Virus record (IMG/VR): IMGVR_UViG_3300046507_000667
Location: 1 to 64,000 of that record
DNA length: 64,000 bases
Strand: one strand, 5' to 3'
Shown piece by piece: positions 10,644 through 44,475 of this stretch (positions are counted from its first letter, which is position 1; each line of letters begins with the position of its first letter). Both the position numbers and the translations under genes were made by a program. The notes below the pieces were generated by a model. The model was not told the origin of the DNA. It ran no database searches and was given only the letters and a program-made list of their open reading frames with translations.

Positions 10644-11180
10644 TTAGAACTCCAAGTATGGTACTGGTGTAGTACTACTTTGATTATAAGTAATAATAGC
10701 TAAATGAATACGAGCTTTTGGATGTTTGAAATCAAGACCCAATACATTATTAGTATCTTTTAAGAATCTAAAGATTTCATTTGATTTATCTTGAGCATAC
10801 TGCCAAAGTAGATCTCTATCATCAAGCATAGTTGCTTGTACATATAGGTATAAATTAAAATGAATAACTTCTAAATTTTCAGAAAATACTGATTGAGGAT
10901 ATTCTTGACCTACATCATAGGCTATATTAAGTAATCTATGAAGAAAAGCTAGAAAATTAGTAGGTTCTTTATAGATATCCTCATAGAAAGTACCGATACG
11001 AATTGTACTCTCGGCATGAATTACGGTTTTCTTACCAATAACAGCTGGATCTTTTTCAGCAGCTACTAAGAATTCACTTTGAATTTTTCTTTTGACTTCT
11101 TTATATTCAACTTCATTTAAATTGAAGTCATTTGGATATAGTGCCTTTTCAGCATAATGATGTCGTGAACCAATAATCAT
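10644..11180 (-). CDS. hypothetical protein
   Basis: 178-aa ORF with AGGAG SD below early promoter. Confidence 0.8.
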   Translation of the reverse strand: MIIGSRHHYAEKALYPNDFNLNEVEYKEVKRKIQSEFLVAAEKDPAVIGKKTVIHAESTIRIGTFYEDIYKEPTNFLAFLHRLLNIAYDVGQEYPQSVFSENLEVIHFNLYLYVQATMLDDRDLLWQYAQDKSNEIFRFLKDTNNVLGLDFKHPKARIHLAIITYNQSSTTPVPYLEF

Positions 11181-11209
11181 TTAATACTTCTCCTTATTAC
11201 ATCATTAAT

Positions 11210-11257
11210 ATAATATATTTACAATCCGTCATTAAAAATTCTTTATAAATATATTAT
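11210..11257. promoter_or_regulatory. divergent early-type promoters (AAATATATTAT on both strands)
   Basis: - copy 11220-11210, + copy 11247-11257. Confidence 0.7.
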
Positions 11258-11305
11258 TTTAATGCTGTAAATAATATTTTAACTATTAAGGAAGGCTATA
11301 CAAAG

Positions 11306-11701
11306 ATGACTGTTACTGCAGTAGTCGCTGAGTTAGAAACACTAATCCGTGATATCAATATTAATACACGGTTCTTAAAATCCTTAGAAGTTACATTAGT
11401 TGATCCGCTCGCTGGAGATAGTCGTGTTAAGGCCATTAAGATCTCGTACACTCTTTCACCTTCTAAATTCTTTCTGCTTGAGAATCTTCAAGTCTTCTCC
11501 TTTATTATTGAATCAGAATATTTCTCGCAAACGGACTATAGTAATATACTCAGAACATCAGAATTCCGTTGCGAATATCCAGGATCCAATTGCTTTGAAG
11601 ACGACATCTGCAAAAGTCTATTCTTTGAAGCGATGAAAGTTTGTCGGAAAGTATATCAATTGTATGAAAGCGAATTGATTACTGACGATGAAAAAGAATA
11701 A
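11306..11701 (+). CDS. hypothetical protein
   Basis: 131-aa ORF, AAGGAAGG upstream. Confidence 0.75.
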   Translation: MTVTAVVAELETLIRDININTRFLKSLEVTLVDPLAGDSRVKAIKISYTLSPSKFFLLENLQVFSFIIESEYFSQTDYSNILRTSEFRCEYPGSNCFEDDICKSLFFEAMKVCRKVYQLYESELITDDEKE

Positions 11702-11770: not shown

Positions 11771-12473
11771 TTATACTTCTTCTTCTTCACCTGAACCATC
11801 ATCCATACTTTCATCACCACCCATATCAGGTTGTGCATTAGCTGGATCATTAGTTTTGGTAATGGTTTCCTTTAATGATGCTTTAAGGAATGCTACCTTT
11901 TCAGTATCTACAAGTGCATTAAAGTCATCCCAATCAAAGTTGGTAATATACTTTTCTAGCATACCTTGTTTCAGTACACCAATAAATGCTTCATGCTGAT
12001 CATCAGGAATACCCTTAACCTTCAAGTTTTGTGTCAATGAATCAAGCAATGCAGAAACGTTATTAATCATTTCTGTAAGATTGGTCATATTCAAGCTTGA
12101 TGGTGATGGGAAAACGATACTGATATTATTTAGATCAAAATTAATGATATCTGCTGGATTATTCTTAGCTTCTTCACTTTGATCAGAACTATCACGTTCA
12201 TTTGATTTATACTCTAGATCATATAGACGACGTAAAAGTTTAGTATATCCTTCACCTAAAATACCTTGCTCAGAAATAATGTCTCGAATAAATCGACTAT
12301 TTTGCATTGAAAGAGTCTTTGCAAAATCAACATTCTCAACTTCTGTCAAATAGGATGAAGGAAGACCAATACCAGAAAAGATATTATTGCTTAACCAGTT
12401 TAAGAAATCATCATCAAGATTTTTAGCTGGCTGTGCATCAATATTCTCAAAAGTAACAGGCTTTTCACCATCT
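11771..12473 (-). CDS. portal protein, exon 2
   Basis: in frame with exon 1 after splicing (YYIPTI/DGEKP); spliced product 866 aa. Confidence 0.85.
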
Positions 12474-12695
12474 CTGGTGTAGTTTGTATGAATAGTTAAT
12501 TCATAATACTTATATTTTCATATAAGATCAGACTATATCTTTACCCTATAAATAGAGTATTTTCTGTTTCCATTTCACTTGAAATGTACATTATAGTCGT
12601 TGAACGTTCCTCTTAAGAGGCTTCGCTGCTGATCACCTTCATCATTACATGTTAAGGACTTCCAGCAATTAAGAAAATTTAACCACGACAGATGG

Positions 12696-13448
12696 TTATT
12701 TACCAAAAATTTCACTTAAACGTTCTTCAATATTTTCAGTATAGATGATACGATGTAAAGTAATTCCATTATCTTTACAAAAATTGTCTTTTACTGAATT
12801 ACGTTTAATACTTTCACTAAGATTATGGCCTGTAAATGCCTTAGATGTTTGAAAGTGCTGTTTACCATCGAATTCAATTAAGAAATATTCTGTATCCGAT
12901 ACATGTATTGCAAAATCAAAATAGAGTTTCCTATTTTTATCTGATTTACAATTATCAAAATAAACTTCAGTATCAAAAGAAATTCCATTATTTCTTAAAA
13001 ATTCTTCAATAGTTTTAACTCCTTTAGATACTTTAGGCAATTTACCCATATTACACTGTGGGCAACGCCTATTATCTAAAAATTTTATTGGAGCTACACT
13101 ATATTCATGGCCACATACATCGTGCCTAATTTTAATCTTAGTATCATTATTATAGTACTTCTCTAAAAAAGTATATTCAGAAGCATTTGGAAGCAATTTT
13201 ACTTGTTCTTCAAATTGCTCAGGTGTTTTTGCTCTGAGCTTATGAAGTTTCTTATACTTACAAGTAAAGCATCCACCTTTATTCTGAAGAAGGTCATTTG
13301 GACGAGACTCAAATTCATTACCACAAATAGTATGTCTAAATAAAATCTTGACATTATTTTTGATATATGTACCTAAAGCTTCGTACTCTGTACCCCACTT
13401 TTCTTTTAAAGTGTTGCAAAAATCTTCATGTGAAATTTTCTTTGGTAT
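12696..13448 (-). CDS. intron-encoded homing endonuclease (zinc-ribbon repeats + Vsr/DUF559-like PD-(D/E)XK domain); no in-frame ATG
   Basis: frame open from ATA 13448 (IPKKISHEDF): H..CG..F and CxxC repeats, C-terminal IEFDGKQHF; the 166-aa track ORF lacks the first repeat. Confidence 0.8.
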   Translation of the reverse strand: MPKKISHEDFCNTLKEKWGTEYEALGTYIKNNVKILFRHTICGNEFESRPNDLLQNKGGCFTCKYKKLHKLRAKTPEQFEEQVKLLPNASEYTFLEKYYNNDTKIKIRHDVCGHEYSVAPIKFLDNRRCPQCNMGKLPKVSKGVKTIEEFLRNNGISFDTEVYFDNCKSDKNRKLYFDFAIHVSDTEYFLIEFDGKQHFQTSKAFTGHNLSESIKRNSVKDNFCKDNGITLHRIIYTENIEERLSEIFGK

Positions 13449-13472
13449 AGCATGTAAAATAGTAATTAAACT

Positions 13473-13484
13473 TATTTACATGTT
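13473..13484 (-). promoter_or_regulatory. intron-internal late-type promoter for the endonuclease
   Basis: AACA TGTAAA TA, 24 nt upstream of ATA 13448. Confidence 0.6.
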
Positions 13485-13489
13485 ATTTT

Positions 13490-15387
13490 ATCGTGGGAAT
13501 GTAATAGTCGTTAAATTCACCTACCACATTCAAGATAGTCTGCATATCTAGATTATGTACACCGGTAATTTCCTTAGACTTTAAGTCACGGACAACCTGT
13601 TGTACAGATGCTGATGCATCATTATTTAATCCGATATCTACATATACTGCACGCTTATCTGCACCACGTAGTACATTCTGCATTAGAATAGTAACTAGTG
13701 TAGCAATATAAAGCTTTGCAAAGAATAGAATATTGTCAAAAATTGATTGACCACGATTGATATGAATAACTTCTTCAGGTTTTAAATAGACAATACGAAT
13801 CTTTTCATTACCTGTAAGCTTCTTAATAGCTAGACCTGAATAGATTGCATACTTCAATGTCTCATTCTTACGAAGAAGCTTAATATTTGAGTCTCTGCTC
13901 ATCTTATTTGCAAAGACATTAGCAATGAACATTAGACGTGCATCATCTACAGCATCAAGCTGTGGTGAACCATTTGGATTTTCAGCCTTAGCTTGATTAC
14001 CCATACGGTTATTACCATCCATACTGATATCATTACGAGCCATTACCATATTTTGAAGAATGGAACCATTGCCGCCTGATTGTGTAGCTGCTGGCATAAA
14101 GGTTACATTGTCTTCTGAGTCTTGACTCTTATCTGAAGGAAGTACTGTACCATCTGGATCAATTTCAACGATATCAAGATGGATATAACCTAGTACATTA
14201 CCATCAAATTCTAATGGTACAATATTAGCTGGATTGACACGCTTAAAGATAGGACGTTCACGACCACCTACAGGAACATCTTCAGGAGTTACCTTTCCAT
14301 CTTGCGGAGCACCCTTATTCTGTTGAGCAACGTTATTTTGCATAACAGAAGTAGGATCAACTCCAAAGAAGTTCATATTTACATCTTCAGATAAAGATGA
14401 AATTTGACTATGTTCCGCAGCAAGATGGCTAGAATTACCAATAATAAAGTGCTCTTGTAGAAATGTATCTACGTTTTTAAGTGCATCTGGAACTTTACTA
14501 CGATCAATACCAAATGCTTCTTGAACACCTTCAGATAACCACTTAGAATAATCTGATTCAGTACGCTGTGATGCTTCTGTAGACCATTCACTACCTTCCA
14601 TAAGACGTTTATCTTTGTCTGAAAGAATAGTAGTTAGTTTTTGATAAGTTCTTAATGGTTGCTCTCCAGCATGCTCAGAAAGCATCTTCTTGATCTGATC
14701 ATTCATTGATAGAGCTAAGAAGAATAACTTACCATTCTTAAGAAATGCTGTTACATCTTCTTTTAGCTTTTTATTGATATTATGATCAACAAGAAGTTTC
14801 TCAATACGTTCACGAATTACTTTTTGATCTTCTTCAGCTACACCTTCAGCATTAATATGGATCGATAAAGAATCTTTCGTAAAATCATCTGGAGAAATGA
14901 TTGTATTGGCAATTGTAGTAAGAGCTAAACGCATTTTAGGAATGATCTTAATGATCATATTGTAGGTAGCAATTGCATCACCTACTTTACGACGATTAAG
15001 GTCAATCATACTAGAAAGCTGTTGTTTATTGCTTGTTAGTACTTCATTTTTAATAGCATCTAGTTCTTTCTTAAATTTCTTACCATTCATACGACGCTGT
15101 GCAGCACCACTCTTTTGAGCTAGAGTGATCATTGTATCAGTAACTTCAACGTTATTTGTTGGATTACCTGCACTAGCGAATTGACCTAAAATCTTTGTGA
15201 TATTTAGGTCAATTTTTTGAGTAAGCTTCTTAGTTTTATCAGCTAGATCTAGATCATCATTATCCATCTCTAGCTGTTTTCTTTGAATCTTTTTTGTAGA
15301 ATTGTCAAATCTATCTTGCAGCTTTCTACGTGCTGAAGGAGAAATTGGACTAGTAAAGATACTATTGTCCTGATCCTTATCTGCCAT
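13490..15387 (-). CDS. portal protein (T4 gp20 / phiKZ gp129-like), exon 1
   Basis: RGADKRAVYVDIG resembles gp20 RAPERRVFYIDVG; spliced size close to jumbo-phage portals. Confidence 0.8.
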
Positions 15388-15399
15388 ATCGATTCCTTT

Positions 15400-16455
15400 T
15401 TAGACTTTTACTTGAAGCGTATTTGTAACTAGTGCCAGTACTTCGTTAAATAAACTTGTAAGCTGTGCAATAACACCCTGAAAAGTTACTAGAGTGTCTC
15501 CATAAGGACTAGTTAGAGCTAAACCATTGTTAGCTTTATACGTCAATGCTACTTTATTCTCAAAGAATAAGTATGTAAAGAGGTCAGTCAAATTGTATTT
15601 ACTGATATTATCGGAATTGGTAGTAGTCACTACGTCATCAGCATATACCGCTAGTTCAGTATTATTGTAACCACGACCTTTGATATTTAATTCAAAAATC
15701 CTTGAAGTTAAATAGTCATCCAATAGCTTTGAATAAGGTTGATAGTTAATAAGACTATGAAAAAATACTAGATTATCTGAAAATGTAGATGAATTACCTG
15801 AATAATCTACAATGAATGAAGCTAATTGATCATTATTGAATGTAGCAAATGGTTCCATTAAATAGGCCCACACTGCTTTCAATACTGTAGCACTTCTTCC
15901 AGTAATACTAGGATCAATAGTCCAGCTAGGTAATAATGCTGATACATCTGTGACATTATGAGTAGCTAATAAAGAAGAAGTTACCTTTTGATAGAATTCT
16001 TCCTTAAATGATGTCTCATTATCATAAATACTACCATTGGCTAGACCATATTCAACATATGGCGCTGATACTGTCTTAAGAGGTACCAACTCATCATACA
16101 TTGTAGTATTTAGCCAATCACTATAACCTGAGTAAAAACTCATTAATGGGGTTGGCTGACTATCTGTTCCAAGTAACCATTGTCTTGCATTGAAAGTCGT
16201 TGGTGTACCTGATGTGTCAGTAGAAGTATTGATCCTGTCATATAGATCAAAAAAATCCTGAATCGCTTGGTCATCTAAAATACTCATATTAGCTAGTTGA
16301 CTCAAATTAATTTGTCTAAGATAAAGCATAGACATAATTCGTTTGAAATTATCAACGTTGGTTAATGAATATAACTTAGAAAACACTAGGAAGGTCTTTG
16401 GAGTTACAAACCGATCTAGATAACTTTGTAAGTCACTATTGGAAATGGTTGTCAT
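15400..16455 (-). CDS. hypothetical protein, probably virion structural
   Basis: 351 aa, in late operon upstream of portal. Confidence 0.75.
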   Translation of the reverse strand: MTTISNSDLQSYLDRFVTPKTFLVFSKLYSLTNVDNFKRIMSMLYLRQINLSQLANMSILDDQAIQDFFDLYDRINTSTDTSGTPTTFNARQWLLGTDSQPTPLMSFYSGYSDWLNTTMYDELVPLKTVSAPYVEYGLANGSIYDNETSFKEEFYQKVTSSLLATHNVTDVSALLPSWTIDPSITGRSATVLKAVWAYLMEPFATFNNDQLASFIVDYSGNSSTFSDNLVFFHSLINYQPYSKLLDDYLTSRIFELNIKGRGYNNTELAVYADDVVTTTNSDNISKYNLTDLFTYLFFENKVALTYKANNGLALTSPYGDTLVTFQGVIAQLTSLFNEVLALVTNTLQVKV

Positions 16456-17498
16456 GATGTGGTCGCAAATTGAGTTGCAGTCTGAGATTGGACGTTAGCT
16501 TGGAATAGCTGATAATTAGTAAAGAAGTTAATAAGTGCATTATATGTACTTACTTCAGTAGCAATTAGTTTCGAATCAAAGAATGCAGAACCATAAATCT
16601 TTGTAAATAATACATAGCGTAGAAATACTACCTTACGGAATGCATTGATAAAATCAGCTTCATTAGCAATTAAAGCCTGATTAAAAATAGACTGCCAAGA
16701 ATAGTTTGGATCAGCCATCAACCTATTGATGGTAAAAGTACCATCTTTTGTTGTATCATTTGCATAATCCGTAGCCATTTCCTTAGTGAATGATGTTATA
16801 TTATCAACATAATTCTCATAGATGACATCTAGAAAGGATTTACGGTAAATATAGCCATTAATAGTATCAAAGCCACCCTTGATAGGAATAGTACCTTCAT
16901 TTGAATAGACAAAATAGCTATTATTAGTAGCTGTTGTCAATGCATTCATTAAAGGACTAATATCAAGATTGAAAGATGCCTTAATCTCAGAAATATTATT
17001 TTTGGCAGCAGCTAATAGTGTTTGAGCTACACTACCATTTACTAAAGCCATATAATTAGTACGTACAATATTGACATCATAGTACGAACCTGGAATGATA
17101 TTCAATGTGTCAAAAATAATCTGTGTACAAAACCGAATTGCTGATACACTTCGACGAGTAATACGTAGTCCAGCATTAGCCATCTGATCTTTTTCAAATT
17201 GGATCCAAGTTGGAAATGCTTTAATCTTATTTCGGTAGTAAGTATATTTACTAACTAGAGTATTTTGTCCATTTTCTACAGAGGTAATGAGTAACTTCAT
17301 TGACTCATTACTAATAGGCATTGTATATAGACTATTAATCTCTAATTGACCATATACTAGATAGTACATGATAGTATTGAGAATACTAGTATCTATAGTA
17401 TTAAGTGCTGCAATTACTCGTTTGATATCAGGATTTGTCATATCTAAAGTAGATAGATACGCATCTAAATCCGTTTTATTTACTAGAACTTGTGACAT
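16452..17498 (-). CDS. hypothetical protein, probably virion structural
   Basis: 348 aa, ATGA coupling; N-terminus resembles 15400 (s.sDL.aYL). Confidence 0.75.
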   Translation of the reverse strand: MSQVLVNKTDLDAYLSTLDMTNPDIKRVIAALNTIDTSILNTIMYYLVYGQLEINSLYTMPISNESMKLLITSVENGQNTLVSKYTYYRNKIKAFPTWIQFEKDQMANAGLRITRRSVSAIRFCTQIIFDTLNIIPGSYYDVNIVRTNYMALVNGSVAQTLLAAAKNNISEIKASFNLDISPLMNALTTATNNSYFVYSNEGTIPIKGGFDTINGYIYRKSFLDVIYENYVDNITSFTKEMATDYANDTTKDGTFTINRLMADPNYSWQSIFNQALIANEADFINAFRKVVFLRYVLFTKIYGSAFFDSKLIATEVSTYNALINFFTNYQLFQANVQSQTATQFATTS

Positions 17499-35480: not shown

Positions 35481-36894
35481 ATGTCAGAAACAGTAAAACA
35501 ACTCCTTTTTGCACAAGCAGTAACTAATCACTTCAATGGTAAGACTAAATCTTTCATTGTAGAAAAAGTTAAAAATAAGACTACAGGTAAAGTTAAGAAA
35601 CGTGTAATCTTTGATGAAAATCCAGACTTTCACTTTTATAAGACTAAGAAAGGTCATGAACTGGATTATGCTGCAAAATGTATTCCAGTCGAGAAAGTTG
35701 AACGTATTGACTGTAAGTATAATCAGTTATTTGAACTAATTGCTAAGATTACTCATAAAGAAGAAGAATATGAGCAAATCATTAGTGAGAATAAGCGTTA
35801 TAAGCTAGCAGGTCTTCATAATGATTATAATATCCATCAGTCAGATGTAGTCTTAGATGACTATCTCATGATGAAATGGGCAAGAGAAAATAAAGATGTA
35901 ACTGAACCAATTGCACTTCATAAGGCATATTTCGATATTGAGGTGGATATCATCAATTATGATGGTTTTCCACAACCAGAAGAAGCGCCTTGTGAAGTTA
36001 ACTTTATTTCATATCTAAGTGATAAGAATCTTATTCTAAATTCATATATTCTCTATAATCGTGAGAATACTAGTATGCGTGAATTCCTACGCAAAGCTAA
36101 AATGGATAAAGAAACTAATTCACTAGATACTGCTTTAGGTAATGAATGGGCATTAAAGGTACTGGAAGAGCATTTCACAGAACCAAATCCTAAGTCAAAA
36201 TCATCAAAGCCACTAAAGGGTCTATGTGTACGAGTCTTTACAAGTGAGCAGGAATTAATCAAAGCTTTCTTTGATGATGTTCATGAAGACAAACCTGATT
36301 TCTTAGGCGGATGGAATAGTCACTTCGATATTCAGACTATTAAATCTAGGCTTGAAAATCATTTAGATGAAAAAGCAGTCAATTTCTTTTGCCCTTCAGA
36401 CTTTCCATTTAAGAAAGTGGATATTCGAAAAGATGAGCATGCTATTGACGTGTCAGATAGAGCGCATGAATTCTCTATCTCAGGCTACACTATCTTCTGT
36501 GACTTATTGTATTACTATGCTTCAATTCGAAAGACTAGTAAGGGTAAGAAAGAATCATGGAAGTTAGGTGATATTCTTCTTGAAGAACTAGGTGAATCTA
36601 AGTTCGAATATGAAGGTTCGATTAAAGATGCAGCATACATGAATTATGAGGCATTCTTAATCTACTCACAGATTGACTCATATCGTCTATATCAGCTTGA
36701 AGAAAAGAATGGCGACGTTGACCTTCTATATGGTATGTCATTGCTTACACATACCCGAATTGAAAAGGTTATGCGTAAGACGATTTCACTGAAGAACCTA
36801 GCAACAACAATGCTATTTGATAATGGTTATGCACTATGTAATAACCATAATAAGTTTATCAAGACCGGAGAGAAGAAGAAATTCCGGGGAGCAT
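35481..36894 (+). CDS. family B DNA polymerase, 3'-5' exonuclease/motif-A subunit, exon 1
   Basis: YFDIEV (ExoI), GWNSHFDI (ExoII), YSQIDS (ExoIII); joins exon 2 as FRGAFVANP; 574 aa spliced. Confidence 0.9.
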
Positions 36895-37678
36895 TAACCA
36901 TAAGTGCTCTTTAAATATACTTAATTGCTGGAAAACCCTCTGCTAAAGGGCAACTAGCAGCTATTTGATCTGCCAAGGTCACACAGAAAAGGTACTACAT
37001 GAAAGAGATCATTTTTAATGATTGGTTGAAATCATTTCTTGATTATGAAATTGATTTCAATGCAGTTAAACCAACACTCATCCGTTTATATGAGGGTGAT
37101 AAATCCTTTGAAGATTTTACAATCTCATATAGTATGAAAAAGGGAGTAATTCCTAATTTCACTATTCGAGAGGATGAATTAAATGGTGTAAAGGGTATTG
37201 TTTTACAAAAAGCAAATCGCCGATCTACTCGACATGTATTTTTACAAGATTTACCGTATAAAGTACGTGCTGTGGAATATAATAAGAAAAGTATGCTATG
37301 GCGTCTTGATCTTTATTATAAAAAAGAATTGTATTACTATCCTAGTGGTGAACGTCGTTATGATCATCGACTTCATTTAGATGGTATCAATGATAATGAT
37401 GAATATTGCTTTTCATATATTCCAAAGCAGTATGAAGCATTTAGTATTATGAAAGGATTTATCGATCCATTGATTATTGATAAACCTAGAGAGAAAGGTC
37501 CAGCTCAAATCAAAAAGAAAGCAGATCAAAAATTCACGAAACGACCCTTGGCGATTAAGTAGTTCAACGACTATTATGTACATCTCAAGTGAGATGGAAA
37601 CAGTATACTCTGATGATATAGTCTGATCTTATGTGAAAGCATAAGTAGGTAGATTAACGACCTACCGACAACACGATG
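36895..37678 (+). mobile_element. group I self-splicing intron (784 nt) in DNA polymerase subunit gene
   Basis: AATTGCTGGAAA, CTAGCAG, GTTCAACGACTA, GATATAGTCT; IGS GTGCTCT pairs exon GGAGCAT; P10 CCATAA pairs TTGTGG; terminal G at 37678. Confidence 0.93.
36999..37562 (+). CDS. intron-encoded protein of unknown function (no clear homing-endonuclease motif)
   Basis: intact 187-aa ORF with AAAGG SD located between intron Q and R elements. Confidence 0.75.
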   Translation: MKEIIFNDWLKSFLDYEIDFNAVKPTLIRLYEGDKSFEDFTISYSMKKGVIPNFTIREDELNGVKGIVLQKANRRSTRHVFLQDLPYKVRAVEYNKKSMLWRLDLYYKKELYYYPSGERRYDHRLHLDGINDNDEYCFSYIPKQYEAFSIMKGFIDPLIIDKPREKGPAQIKKKADQKFTKRPLAIK

Positions 37679-37989
37679 TTGTGGCAAACCCTAACCTGAT
37701 TGCAAAGGTTGGAATTGAGGTTAATGGTTCTAAAACTCATAATATTTTTGAAAATGTAATTGACGAAGACTTGGCTTCACTATATCCGTCTATTATTCTT
37801 TCATCTAATATTGACTCTGAAACTATGATCGGCAAGATCTTAGCTGAAGATGATGATGAGTATTTAGGGCTCTTCGGTGAAATGATTGCTGAAGCTGATT
37901 TAGTATCTATTGGTAATCATTTTCTAAATCTACCATCTTTTGAAGATGTTGTAGAAAATATTGGCGATTTCCTTCTGGAAGAAGCATAA
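37679..37989 (+). CDS. DNA polymerase exonuclease/motif-A subunit, exon 2
   Basis: DEDLASLYPSIILSSNI = PolB motif A. Confidence 0.9.
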
Positions 37990-41855: not shown

Positions 41856-43244
41856 ATGAATTTAGATGTGTTAAATATTGACGACTTTATTAAGGTTAAT
41901 GGGATTAAGCAAGTATCTTCACCATTTATCTTTGCTGCAGATAAAACACCTGATCCAGAAGGTATCTTCTCATATGATATTTTTGGTCGAGTTGGTTCTG
42001 TAGCTCGTAAAGTCAATTATGGTTATGTGGATCTTAAACGAGAGTTTATTCATCCATTCGTATACAATATCTTGCAATCAGTTTATCGTAATCTTCCTCT
42101 GATTATTTCAGGTGATAAATACGTTAAACTTGGTCCAGATGGTACCATTCTCAATGCTAAGGACGATGATCCTGAAGGTCAGACAGGTATTGACTTTATT
42201 ATTGATAATTGGGAAAAGATTTCTTGGGAATCAAAATCTTCTACAGCTAGTCGTGAAAAGAAGTTAGCTATTCTTAGTGATTTTTCACGCAGTGAAATCT
42301 TCGTTACTAAGTGGCTAATTATTCCTGCAATGTATCGTGATATTAATTTACATTCACAAGATACAGGCAAGATTAGTATGGATGAAGTTAATTCATTTTA
42401 TAATAAGTTAATTAATCTTACAAATTCTGAATCAATTACTTTTGCTTCAAGTACTAATACTCAGTCTGCAGTGCAGATGAATCTAGTAGATATTCATAAC
42501 TATTTAACAAAGAAACTTTCAGGTAAGCGTGGTGTTATTCGTCAAGCTGTTATGGGTAAGACTATTGACCATGCAGCAACAAACGTTATTTCTGCACCAA
42601 GGTTCAATGATGAACACTATAAGAATCAGCTAGTACCTTATAACTATATTGGAATTCCATTGTATGTTATTTGTGCTACATTCTATCCATATTTCTTAAA
42701 ATGGATGGAAGATTATTTTTATGGTATTGAACAAAATGCTGAATTCGTATTCGGTGGTCAAGTATATGACTCCAGTATGGCCGCTAATGTAGTCAATTCA
42801 GAATCTATCCGTAAATTGATTACTGCTTACGTTAAAGATAAGACAAAACGTATTCGTACTGCACCATTTTCACTTAATAAGACAAATAGAAAGCTACAGT
42901 TCCGTGATGCTATTATTAATTTCCGTGACTATACTCTAACTGATCTTTTATTTGAAGCTGCAGAGCAAATTGTTAGTAATAAGTTAGTCCTTAGTACTCG
43001 TTATCCTGTTACTGGTTCAGAATCTATTATTATGAACAAAGTACGGATTTTAACTACAGAAGAAACTATTGATATGACACCAAGGCTTCGTACCCTTAGT
43101 GAATCAGCTAAGTTTCAATATAGTAAGTATCCAAGCTTCCCATATGATAGTACTGGCGCGGTTATTGCAGATCATGTACGTTGGATTGATTCCCTAGTAC
43201 CAAATAACTCCTTCCTAGCTGGTATGGGTGGTGACTATGACGGT
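41856..43244 (+). CDS. rpoC: phage RNA polymerase beta' subunit, N-terminal/catalytic part, exon 1
   Basis: PDPEGIFSYDIFG, GKRGVIRQAVMGK, RYP; ends GGDYDG; 515 aa spliced. Confidence 0.92.
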
Positions 43245-43290
43245 AGTTTTGCAATAAATTTATAGATTGTGCTAAAATGGGTGGTGATTA

Positions 43291-43302
43291 AACAAAATCA
43301 TA
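43291..43302 (+). promoter_or_regulatory. intron-internal late-type promoter
   Basis: AACA AAATCA TA, 16 nt before ATG 43319. Confidence 0.6.
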
Positions 43303-43318
43303 ATTTGTATATAGGATT

Positions 43319-44290
43319 ATGATTATGGCAAAAGCACTAACTCTAGCTGAATTTCAAGAAAGGATTTCAGCAAAATATGACAATGAGTATTCATTAATTT
43401 TCTTCAAAGCACTAGCAGTTAGAGCTCCTATCATTCTTAGACATAGTTGTGGACATGAATTTGAATCTACTTTTCAATCATTTGTAAATGATTCTAAAGG
43501 TAAATGCAAAGTATGCTATTTACAAACTAGTAAAGGAAGACAAAAAGCTCTTACTGAAGATGAGTTAATAAAAAGGCTTATTAATACTGAATATAACTAT
43601 ATATCAGGATTTATTAATACTAAGAAGAAAGCTTTATTTAGACATAGCTGCGGACATGAATTTGAATCTCTACCAAGAGATATTTATAGTAATAAGTCAG
43701 GCTGTCCAAAATGTGCTAATAAAAATAGAGGTAAATATCAAGTTAATAAAAATTATTTAGAATTACTACTATCTGTTGAAGATGGTAATGAATATAAATG
43801 GTTAGATAAGTTTAGGGATAATAAAACACTTACGCTTATTAAACACTTAACTTGCAATAATGAATATAAAGTTCGTCCAAATGATTTTCAACAAGGTTAT
43901 CGTTGTCCATTTTGTTCTGAAAAATTTCCTACAGAATCAAAAAGTGTTAAGCACATAATAAAACGTCTTACCGAATTAAATATTTCTTTCGCTAGAGAAT
44001 TTACTGATTCTAGATGTCGTTTTAAAAATGTGCTTAGATTTGATTTTGCTATTGATTTACCAGATAGCAGGAAACTTTTAATAGAATTTGATGGTAAATA
44101 ACATTTTCATCCCTTAATTAATGAAGATGTATTTGAACTTCAAATTGAAAGAGATTTAGTTAAGAATCAGTTTTGTAAAATATACTCTAAGGAGTATGTA
44201 TTAGAAAGAATTTCTTATAAAGAAAATGTAGAAGATAAATTAGTTGAAATATTATTAAAACACAATCTTGTAGAGTATTGCCGTCATTAA
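43319..44290 (+). pseudogene. intron homing endonuclease (3 zinc-ribbon repeats + Vsr/DUF559-like domain) with premature TAA at 44099-44101
   Basis: IEFDGK*HF versus IEFDGKQHF in the portal-intron paralog; frame continues 62 codons (RD..KNQFC...ERISY) to TAA 44290. Confidence 0.8.
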
Positions 44291-44475
44291 ACTCTCTTAA
44301 TTGCTGGAAACCCTTAAATGGCAATCAGCAGCGAATCTTTTTATGAAGAACGTTCAACGACTATTATGTACTTATCAAATGATAAGGAAACAGAGAGCAT
44401 CGAAAGATGAAGATATAGTCTGGTCTTATATGAAAATATAAGTATGATAGTGTAATAAACTATCGCAACACTAAG

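What the first reader, a model, noticed from the sequence alone, without database searches (positions are those of the whole stretch)
11771..15387. Group I intron interrupting the portal gene
Seen: the two track ORFs (634 and 192 aa) join at ACG AT/A GAT into YYIPTIDGEKP, giving 866 aa; a 7-bp P1 with the U.G splice pair and a 6-bp P10 define both junctions. Established: phage group I introns mostly sit in nucleotide-metabolism, polymerase, lysin or terminase genes. Inference: portal is an unusual target, making head assembly splicing-dependent; automated annotation would miscall two truncated genes.
Basis: partly seen in the sequence, partly recalled or inferred. Interest (0 to 1): 0.6.

Follow-up and report, generated by a model that had tools for sequence, protein, structure and literature searches.

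The report
Mobile group I intron splitting portal gene
The portal (head-entry) gene of this 249-kb soil jumbo phage is interrupted by a 1,016-base self-splicing-type group I intron that carries its own homing nuclease gene; it is a real but ordinary mobile intron in an uncommon host gene, and one of about eight introns in the genome.

Summary
On the minus strand, exon 1 (15387..13490) and exon 2 (12473..11771) of a phiKZ/AR9/phiR1-37-type portal gene are separated by a 1,016-nt group I intron (13489..12474). Rfam RF00028 scores its core at 84.5 bits. A 13-nt internal guide sequence just upstream of P3 forms the 7-bp P1 (with U.G) and the 6-bp P10, and the intron ends in G.

About twenty intron-less homologues read straight across the junction (YYIP-VV/TI-DGEKP), with exactly one residue at the split codon. 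A contig from another rhizosphere metagenome run lacks exactly these 1,016 nt, so intron-plus and intron-minus alleles coexist.

The P1 loop holds a 250-codon homing endonuclease: two treble-clef zinc modules plus a Vsr-like PD-(D/E)xK domain. Its start codon is ATG in sister strains but ATA in this genome.

The genome carries about eight such introns: RNA polymerase subunits, DNA polymerase, terminase, topoisomerase, helicase and portal. This is typical of AR9-like jumbo phages.

Splicing itself is inferred, because no RNA data exist. I rate it a new member of a known kind, of modest interest. I found no published portal intron, but introns in terminase, capsid and prohead protease genes are known.

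The parts
13490..15387 (-). Portal exon 1: codons 1-632 plus the first two bases (AT) of split codon 633. The last base, U13490, is the U of the U.G pair at the 5' splice site.
   Evidence: phrog_3004 profile positions 40-586; Portal_T4 24.2 bits against cut-off 22.9; 47% identity to phiR1-37 g160 residues 3-639.
12474..13489 (-). Group I intron, 1,016 nt: 5' hairpin, homing endonuclease ORF in the P1 loop, guide sequence, P3-P9.1 core, terminal G at 12474.
   Evidence: Run X6 holds a contig that skips exactly 1,016 nt between 12472 and 13489.
13483..13485 (-). TAA in the exon-1 frame, two codons past the 5' splice site. It stops ribosomes on unspliced RNA before they enter the intron.
13447..13486 (-). 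Hairpin at the intron 5' end (-9.8 kcal/mol, z = -3.0). Its base overlaps the endonuclease start codon.
   Evidence: A role in translational control is inference only.
12696..13448 (-). Homing endonuclease ORF, 250 codons plus TAA. The first codon is ATA here and ATG in sister strains. It has two treble-clef zinc-finger modules and a C-terminal Vsr-like PD-(D/E)xK nuclease domain.
   Evidence: phrog_559, 2.7e-53; position 13446 A in the window, G elsewhere; 250-aa call P0024; Z 10.0 to Vsr 1cw0_A, Z 9.6 to I-Bth0305I 3r3p_B.
12683..12695 (-). Internal guide sequence. 12695..12690 (CCAUCU) forms P10 with exon 2; 12689..12683 (GUCGUGG) forms P1 with exon 1.
   Evidence: The same position in three paralogous introns carries a different guide, each complementary to its own 5' exon.
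13490..13496 (-). Exon strand of P1 (CCACGAU).
12468..12473 (-). Exon strand of P10 (AGAUGG), the first six bases of exon 2.
12487..12678 (-). Ribozyme core. P3 12678-12672/12565-12559; P4 12666-12661/12632-12627; P5 12657-12654/12639-12636; P6a 12620-12609; P7 12598-12594/12535-12531; extra hairpin 12586-12571; P8 12557-12544; P9 12524-12511; P9.1 12505-12487. There is no P2.
   Evidence: alignment to RF00028; MFE fold, z = -2.7; coordinates; 20 of 48 pairs with compensatory changes among four paralogues.
11771..12473 (-). Portal exon 2: third base of the split codon (A12473), 233 codons and the stop (11773..11771).
   Evidence: phrog_3004 profile positions 590-746; 55% identity to phiR1-37 g160 residues 642-845.

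Best explanation
This is a mobile group I intron inserted in the single-copy portal gene of a phiR1-37/AR9-like jumbo phage. The gene is transcribed as one pre-mRNA. Ribosomes on unspliced RNA stop at a TAA two codons into the intron. The guide sequence, about 800 nt downstream of the 5' splice site and just before P3, pairs with the end of exon 1 (P1, with U.G) and the start of exon 2 (P10). The P3-P9 core then catalyses the two guanosine-dependent transesterifications and joins AT|A into an Ile codon, giving ...DYYIPTIDGEKP... in an 866-residue portal protein. The P1 loop carries a Vsr-like PD-(D/E)xK homing endonuclease with two zinc-finger DNA-binding modules. In co-infections this enzyme would cut intron-less portal alleles at the conserved IP(T/V)(I/V)DGEKP-coding site and copy the intron in by recombinational repair. 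In the window's own genome the endonuclease start codon has mutated from ATG to ATA, so here the intron is probably close to immobile but still has to splice.

Shown: the anatomy, the family membership of the RNA, the junction, the intron-plus/intron-minus polymorphism and the nuclease fold. Inferred: splicing in vivo, endonuclease specificity and homing.
For: - RF00028 scores 84.5 bits, E = 5e-20. The J8/7, J6/7 and P7 consensus bases are intact.
- P1, P10 and the terminal G sit exactly at the junction.
- Four paralogous introns in this genome each carry a different guide sequence, complementary to their own 5' exon. One of them (topoisomerase II) has a short 13-nt P1 loop, which shows that the endonuclease ORF is an insertion into L1.
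- 20 of 48 core pairs show compensatory changes.
- Exon 1 and exon 2 map to adjacent positions of phrog_3004 (586 and 590) and of phiR1-37 g160 (639 and 642), leaving one alignment column for the split codon.
- Nineteen full-length homologues and 11 related viral contigs are uninterrupted. One reads PTIDGEKP, identical to the predicted junction.
- A contig in run X6 lacks exactly the 1,016 nt. Contigs in X3-X5 and two sister contigs carry the intron.
- Against sister contig L011 the intron has 3 differences in 1,016 nt, while the flanking exons have 58 in 2,601 nt (Fisher p = 8e-6).
- The portal is single-copy in a complete genome with terminal repeats.
- Endonuclease fold: Z 10.0 to Vsr and Z 9.6 to the intron endonuclease I-Bth0305I.
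Against: - There is no RNA evidence. All eight runs holding the sequence are recorded or guessed as DNA, so splicing is not observed.
- The run type of X6 is itself a guess ('DNA?'). If it were RNA, the joint would be spliced RNA rather than an intron-less allele. That would still fix the junction.
- P1 has to form across about 800 nt, which may need co-transcriptional folding or helper proteins.
- The endonuclease lacks a canonical start in this genome (ATA), so present-day mobility of this copy is doubtful.
- Portal identity rests on weak sequence hits and on a low-confidence model (pLDDT 52) of a homologue.
- The lower divergence of the intron is partly confounded by a generally patchy mosaic between the strains.
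Confidence: 0.92

Rival explanations
1. Fractured gene. The insertion no longer splices, and the portal is made as two polypeptides (about 634 aa plus a C-terminal piece) that assemble non-covalently, as in genes split by free-standing endonucleases.
For: Two separate ORFs are called. An in-frame TTG at 12349 could start a 192-aa product.
Against: Every core element and P1/P10 are intact and covary. A TTG start at 12349 would drop 41 residues, including the nearly invariant DGEKP...LDDDFLNWLSNNIFSG block.
Confidence: 0.03
2. Dead gene. The intron is splicing-defective, and the contig represents a defective or helper-dependent phage with a broken portal.
For: No RNA data exist. The endonuclease start codon is mutated in this genome.
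Against: The same intron-containing allele is found in at least five independent samples, and the exon differences are almost all synonymous (41 nt changes give 1 aa change in exon 1). This indicates purifying selection on both exons. The genome is complete with terminal repeats and has only one portal copy.
Confidence: 0.03
3. Assembly artefact: a chimeric contig with an intron-plus-endonuclease cassette from another locus or phage pasted into the portal gene.
For: Related intron cores occur elsewhere in the same genome and in the same metagenomes, and such repeats can confuse assemblers.
Against: The identical arrangement occurs in two other IMG/VR contigs from different samples and in a 1,769-nt contig of run X3 that spans both junctions. 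The guide sequence is specific to the portal exons.
Confidence: 0.01

Closest known systems
Group I introns of AR9-like jumbo phages (Bacillus AR9; Staphylococcus MarsHill, Madawaska, Machias)
   Same: The phage lineage is related: the portal is 31-45% identical to AR9, PBS1 and MarsHill 'portal vertex protein'. There are many introns per genome, in RNA polymerase subunits, DNA polymerase, large terminase and gyrase/topoisomerase (bioRxiv 10.1101/2020.12.14.422802). This genome has introns in the same set of genes.
   Different: That paper lists RNA polymerase subunits, prohead scaffold/protease, DNA polymerase, terminase and gyrase B as interrupted, but not the portal. I could not read the AR9 genome paper itself.
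[quoted passage not shown] Escherichia phage tootiki)
   Same: It is the closest ribozyme found by nucleotide search: 86% identity over 78 nt of the P4-P7 core. It is confirmed as RF00028 at 61 bits, lying between two DNA polymerase CDSs.
   Different: The host gene and the phage family differ. That intron is about 230 nt with no ORF inside; an endonuclease gene lies downstream of the second exon.
Phage T4 td / nrdB / nrdD (sunY) mobile introns
   Same: [quoted passage not shown]
   Different: The T4 ORFs sit in P6/P6a/P9.1 loops and encode GIY-YIG or HNH enzymes, and their targets are nucleotide-metabolism genes. Here the ORF is in L1, the enzyme is Vsr-like, and the target is a virion gene.
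I-Bth0305I (Bacillus thuringiensis phage 0305phi8-36 intron endonuclease, PDB 3R3P) and Vsr endonuclease (1CW0)
   Same: The C-terminal 115 residues of the intron ORF superpose at Z 9.6 on I-Bth0305I (rmsd 3.2 over 90 residues) and at Z 10.0 on Vsr (rmsd 2.7 over 102 residues).
   Different: Sequence identity is only 13-17%. The invariant motif here is D...E-x-D-G-x-x-H...K, not a literal E-D-x-H-D. The N-terminal DNA-binding part here is two DUF4379/DUF723-type zinc modules.
PhiPA3 gp210 intron endonuclease (Birkholz et al. 2024, cited in PMC12908238)
   Same: It is an intron-borne endonuclease in a jumbo phage that attacks the intron-less allele of an essential virion-related gene in a co-infecting relative.
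   Different: The nuclease family and the target (virion RNA polymerase) differ, and that phage forms a nucleus. No functional data exist here.

Membership tests
Group I intron (Rfam RF00028) | Covariance-model score above the curated gathering score | tested here: met
   84.5 bits against 50, E = 5e-20, model positions 1-253.
Group I intron (Rfam RF00028) | P1 helix between the 5' exon end and an internal guide sequence, with a U.G pair at the splice site | tested here: met
   CCACGAU (13496..13490) pairs with GUCGUGG (12689..12683). The guide occurs once in the intron. Guide and exon covary in four paralogous introns.
Group I intron (Rfam RF00028) | Terminal G (omega-G) and a P10 pairing that aligns the 3' exon | tested here: met
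   G at 12474. CCAUCU (12695..12690) pairs with AGAUGG (12473..12468).
Group I intron (Rfam RF00028) | Conserved P3-P9 core supported by covariation | tested here: met
   20 of 48 predicted pairs keep pairing through double changes among four paralogues. P3 is UUUUCU/AGAAAA here and CUCUCU/AGAGAG in the RNA polymerase intron.
Group I intron (Rfam RF00028) | Guanosine-dependent self-splicing of the RNA | not testable with these tools
   No RNA run holds the sequence. This needs in vitro transcription or RT-PCR.
Mobile (homing) intron | Endonuclease ORF looped out of the ribozyme | tested here: met
   A 250-codon ORF lies in L1, between the 5' splice site and the guide sequence. A paralogous intron without an ORF in L1 has a 13-nt loop there.
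Mobile (homing) intron | Intron-plus and intron-minus alleles of the same site in related genomes | tested here: met
   A contig in run X6 skips exactly 1,016 nt. X3-X5, L010 and L011 carry the intron. Caveat: the run kind of X6 is guessed as DNA.
Mobile (homing) intron | Intact, translatable endonuclease gene | tested here: inconclusive
   The frame is open for 250 codons, but the start codon is ATA in the window. It is ATG in L010, L011, X3 and X4.
Mobile (homing) intron | The endonuclease cleaves the intron-less target site | not testable with these tools
   This needs expressed protein and a cleavage assay.
Tailed-phage portal protein (phiKZ gp129 / T4 gp20 type) | Sequence-profile membership | tested here: met
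   Pfam Portal_T4 scores 24.2 bits against cut-off 22.9 on exon 1. phrog_213 'portal protein' 1.7e-6 and phrog_3004. The profile of homologues hits PHIKZ129 (9xpe_M, 12 chains per entry) at E = 0.0012. All are weak but concordant.
Tailed-phage portal protein (phiKZ gp129 / T4 gp20 type) | Portal fold | tested here: inconclusive
   The model of the uninterrupted homologue P0006 has mean pLDDT 51.8. Even so, the Foldseek top hit is the phiKZ portal (E = 1.2e-7, prob 1.00), and most further hits are portals of N4, HFTV1, lambda, T4, 812 and G20c.
Tailed-phage portal protein (phiKZ gp129 / T4 gp20 type) | Dodecamer at the unique capsid vertex | not testable with these tools
   This needs virion structure or proteomics. 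phiR1-37 g160 is annotated as a virion structural protein.
Vsr-like / EDxHD PD-(D/E)xK homing endonucleases | Vsr-type nuclease fold in the catalytic domain | tested here: met
   Model pLDDT 86. Z 10.0 to 1cw0_A, Z 9.6 to 3r3p_B, Z 9.2 to 1vsr, over residues 136-250.
Vsr-like / EDxHD PD-(D/E)xK homing endonucleases | Literal E-D-x-H-D catalytic motif | tested here: inconclusive
   The invariant residues in 35 homologues are D178, E192, D194, G195, H198 and K220 (I-E-F-D-G-K-Q-H). This is similar in spirit, but I made no residue-by-residue superposition on I-Bth0305I.
HNH endonuclease (the label of phrog_559) | Beta-beta-alpha-metal HNH motif | tested here: not met
   There is no Pfam HNH hit. 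The catalytic domain folds as PD-(D/E)xK. The PHROG label appears to be a misnomer.

The most novel reading that the evidence does not exclude
The portal intron and its Vsr-like endonuclease act as a weapon between co-infecting strains of this jumbo phage. By cutting the intron-less portal allele, which does coexist in the same habitat, the endonuclease would block head assembly of the competitor or convert it. That would make the portal vertex a target of intron-mediated interference competition, as shown for the virion RNA polymerase gene in PhiPA3 and PhiKZ. A weaker variant: splicing efficiency across the 800-nt P1 loop sets the low portal dosage.
Probability: 0.15. Interest if true: 0.55.

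Novelty: new member of a known kind. Interest (0 to 1): 0.35.

Why it matters
For annotation, the portal is a hallmark gene used to recognise, classify and build trees of tailed phages. Here it is called as a truncated 634-aa protein plus an orphan ORF, and public gene calls already do this.

For biology, the case adds a virion-assembly gene to the list of group I intron targets in AR9/phiR1-37-like jumbo phages. It offers a natural pair of intron-plus and intron-minus alleles from the same habitat, and an endonuclease caught at the first step of decay (ATG to ATA). This is a compact example of the homing cycle. It does not change what is known about how such introns work.

Tried and rejected
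- **Alternative guide sequence.** I looked for one close to the 5' splice site. There is none; GUCGUGG occurs once.
- **Missing start codon.** I first read the ATG at 13481, followed at once by an in-frame TAA, as a nonsense-mutated start or a read-through signal. I rejected this. Sister strains have ATG at 13448, a paralogous endonuclease starts at the aligned position, and a 250-aa gene is called there.
- **Recoded TAA.** Rejected. The portal exons and other conserved genes show no in-frame TAA, so I named no alternative code.
- **Co-conversion tract.** L010 has six synonymous differences at 12398-12446, next to the intron. I do not claim a co-conversion tract, because similar patches occur elsewhere in the 12.7-kb comparison.
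- **Solved structures.** Single-sequence searches for exon 1 and for the endonuclease found nothing.
- **Foldseek for the endonuclease.** It gave only weak E-values. The VIA re-alignment was needed.
- **RNA evidence.** No RNA run holds the sequence.
- **AR9 genome paper.** It is not held.
- **Promoter/terminator scan.** Uninformative; there were fewer sigma-70-like sites than in shuffles.
- **Literature searches for a portal-gene intron.** These returned only terminase, polymerase, lysin and capsid cases.
- **Joined protein.** All searches were done exon by exon by reference, and the fold was made on a natural uninterrupted homologue.
Full report
**Where the window lies.** The window is the first 64 kb of a 249,347-bp IMG/VR virus record with direct terminal repeats, estimated as complete. 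The sequence occurs in eight rhizosphere metagenome runs, and none is on record as RNA. By portal similarity the nearest named relative is Yersinia jumbo phage phiR1-37 (47-55% amino-acid identity). Next come the Bacillus phages AR9 and PBS1 and the Staphylococcus jumbo phages.

**The observation.** On the minus strand, the ORF listing gives a 634-aa ORF (15387..13483) and a 192-aa ORF (12349..11771). The second frame is open upstream to 12472.

Rfam RF00028 matches 12752..12509 (minus strand) at 84.5 bits against a gathering score of 50, with E = 5e-20. The J6/7, P7 and J8/7 consensus bases are intact.

Immediately 5' of P3 lies CCAUCU|GUCGUGG (12695..12683). The second half pairs with the last seven bases of exon 1 (CCACGAU, 13496..13490), ending in U.G. 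The first half pairs with the first six bases of exon 2 (AGAUGG, 12473..12468). The intron ends in G at 12474. GUCGUGG occurs only once in the intron, and no alternative guide lies near the 5' splice site.

The intron is therefore 13489..12474, 1,016 nt.

**Independent confirmation of the junction.**
- PHROG family phrog_3004 aligns exon 1 to profile positions 40-586 and exon 2 to 590-746.
- phiR1-37 g160 (878 aa, uninterrupted) aligns to exon 1 up to P639 and to exon 2 from D642, so YYIP-VV-DGEKP corresponds to YYIP-T[I]-DGEKP with no gap.
- In a multiple alignment, exon 1 ends at column 665 and exon 2 starts at column 667.
- Nineteen full-length database homologues (847-959 aa) and eleven related viral contigs are uninterrupted. 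Only two near-identical sister contigs carry the extra 1 kb.
- One homologue, on a 263-kb contig, reads PTIDGEKP, identical to the predicted junction.
- D-G-E-K-P is nearly invariant in the family, so the intron sits at one of the most conserved sites, as homing introns usually do.

The strongest evidence comes from laying the contigs of four further runs on the region. One contig in run X6 joins 12472 to 13489 and skips exactly 1,016 nt. There is a one-base ambiguity because an A flanks both sides. A 1,769-nt contig in X3 spans both junctions with the intron present. Intron-plus and intron-minus alleles of the same phage species therefore coexist. The caveat is that the kind of X6 is only guessed as DNA. 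If it were RNA, the joint would be spliced RNA, and the junction would be fixed just the same.

**Structure of the RNA.** There is no P2; P3 follows the guide sequence directly. The helix coordinates are listed under parts.

The genome holds five RF00028 matches above the cut-off and three below it. Four of these introns are clear paralogues of one another. Aligning them gives 48 consensus pairs, 20 of which carry compensatory double changes across P5, P6a, P7, the extra hairpin, P8, P9 and P9.1.

At the position equivalent to the portal guide sequence, each paralogue has a different guide, complementary to the end of its own 5' exon:
- AUGACGGU/GCCGUCAU in an RNA polymerase beta gene.
- UCUGGAU/GUCCAGA in another RNA polymerase beta gene.
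- UGAGGGU/GCUCUCA in topoisomerase II.

In the topoisomerase intron the P1 loop is only 13 nt. In the other three the loop holds an endonuclease ORF of about 0.8-1 kb. The unusual 800-nt distance between the splice site and the guide is therefore an ORF insertion in L1, not a mis-assignment.

**The intron ORF.** The frame 13475..12696 is open for 259 codons but has no ATG, GTG or TTG before 13196. The answer lies at codon 13448-13446. It is ATA in the window but ATG in both sister contigs and in the contigs of runs X3 and X4. A 250-aa protein is called there on a sister contig (P0024), and a paralogous endonuclease starts at the aligned position. This genome has therefore lost, or greatly weakened, the start codon.

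The protein matches phrog_559 (2.7e-53), labelled 'HNH endonuclease'. It has two treble-clef zinc modules of DUF4379/DUF723 type. Its C-terminal domain has invariant D178, E192, D194, G195, H198 and K220.

A confident model (pLDDT 86) superposes on Vsr endonuclease at Z 10.0 and on the intron endonuclease I-Bth0305I at Z 9.6. The enzyme is therefore a Vsr-like PD-(D/E)xK homing endonuclease, not an HNH enzyme.

**Is the host gene the portal?** The evidence is concordant but individually weak:
- Pfam Portal_T4 is just above its cut-off on exon 1, and phrog_213 'portal protein' scores 1.7e-6.
- A profile of the homologues hits phiKZ gp129 in a 12-chain portal entry at E = 0.0012.
- A low-confidence AlphaFold model of the uninterrupted homologue still finds the phiKZ portal first (E = 1.2e-7), followed by a list of other portals.
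- AR9, PBS1 and the Staphylococcus jumbo phages annotate their homologues as portal vertex protein.
- The genome has one copy only.

I did not build, search or fold the joined protein. Everything was done exon by exon or on natural intact homologues.

**Mobility.** Against sister contig L011, the 1,016-nt intron has 3 differences while the 2,601 nt of flanking exons have 58, nearly all synonymous (Fisher p = 8e-6). This fits recent lateral spread of the intron among strains. The strains are mosaic in general, so I treat it as suggestive only. The intron is confined to one phage species among all detectable relatives.

**Comparison with what is known.**
- AR9-like jumbo phages are known to be intron-rich. 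Interrupted genes there include RNA polymerase subunits, prohead scaffold/protease, DNA polymerase, large terminase and gyrase (10.1101/2020.12.14.422802).
- crAss-like phages have introns in the major capsid gene (PMC7886860).
- Jug phages average 18.5 introns per genome (PMC12880540).
- My searches found no paper reporting an intron in a portal gene. The library is incomplete, so this is absence of evidence only.
- By nucleotide search, the nearest ribozyme is the DNA polymerase intron of Felixounavirus phages.

**Verdict.** It is a new member of a well-known kind, a mobile group I intron with a homing endonuclease, in an uncommon host gene and in a lineage already known for many introns. 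Splicing in vivo remains to be shown.

Noticed in passing
window 43245-44474 (+): A second group I intron (RF00028, 81 bits at 44243-44442) splits an RNA polymerase beta subunit gene (exon 1 41856..43244, phrog_2986). Its guide GCCGUCAU pairs with the exon end AUGACGGU. The L1 endonuclease ORF (43319-44101, same family as the portal one) has an in-frame TAA where homologues have Gln in the invariant I-E-F-D-G-K-Q-H motif. The frame then stays open and homologous for about 60 more codons, so this looks like a fresh nonsense mutation in a second endonuclease.
   Followed up: partly
window 36915-37680 (+): The DNA polymerase is split into 35481-36914 and 37681-37989 (phrog_3011 profile positions 20-454 and 470-562). 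A sub-threshold RF00028 match (32 bits, 37451-37645) and a 187-aa ORF with no PHROG match lie between them. This is probably a third, more divergent intron.
   Followed up: partly
G000:C1 65382-65663, 72871-73021, 105854-106085, 173352-173405, 186426-186653: Five further RF00028 matches lie outside the window (three above the cut-off, two below). They interrupt or adjoin an RNA polymerase subunit piece, the large terminase, a second RNA polymerase beta gene, a DnaB-like helicase and the topoisomerase II large subunit. With the three in the window, that makes about eight introns in 249 kb, and at least five carry a phrog_559-type endonuclease.
   Followed up: partly
window 13446 (minus-strand codon 13448-13446): The endonuclease start codon is ATA in this genome but ATG in two sister contigs and in contigs of two other runs. 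This single G-to-A change probably silences the homing enzyme.
   Followed up: yes
window 13447-13486 (-): A stable hairpin (z = -3.0) sits at the very 5' end of the intron. It contains an ATG-TAA mini-ORF in the endonuclease frame, and its base overlaps the endonuclease start codon. It may be a translational control element like those of the T4 intron endonucleases, but this is untested.
   Followed up: partly
window 13585-13633 and 12398-12446: There are dense patches of synonymous substitutions between sister strains: 16 in 49 nt of exon 1 against L011, and 6 in 49 nt of exon 2 against L010, L011, X3 and X6. The surrounding sequence is otherwise nearly identical. Similar patches occur elsewhere (e.g. 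10995-11410, 17166-17265), so short-patch recombination seems common in this population.
   Followed up: partly
runs X3, X4, X5 laid on window 12509-12541 and 12597-12633: Several contigs match only short pieces of the intron core and then continue into unrelated sequence. Relatives of this ribozyme therefore sit at other loci or in other phages of the same soils.
   Followed up: no
L013:3-386: An intron-less phiR1-37-like contig encodes a relative of the portal-intron endonuclease (36% identity over 133 residues) about 3.7 kb upstream of its portal gene. It appears not to be inside the portal, so it may be a free-standing or differently located copy.
   Followed up: no
phrog_559 (matches at window 12696-13448, 43319-44101): This PHROG family is labelled 'HNH endonuclease', but its members here have a Vsr-like PD-(D/E)xK catalytic domain (Z 10 to Vsr) and no HNH motif. 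The label looks wrong.
   Followed up: yes
window 15400-17498 (-): The two genes upstream of the portal (351 and 348 aa) are in the same order as phiR1-37 g161 and g162 (virion structural proteins of similar size). The head-gene neighbourhood is therefore conserved.
   Followed up: no
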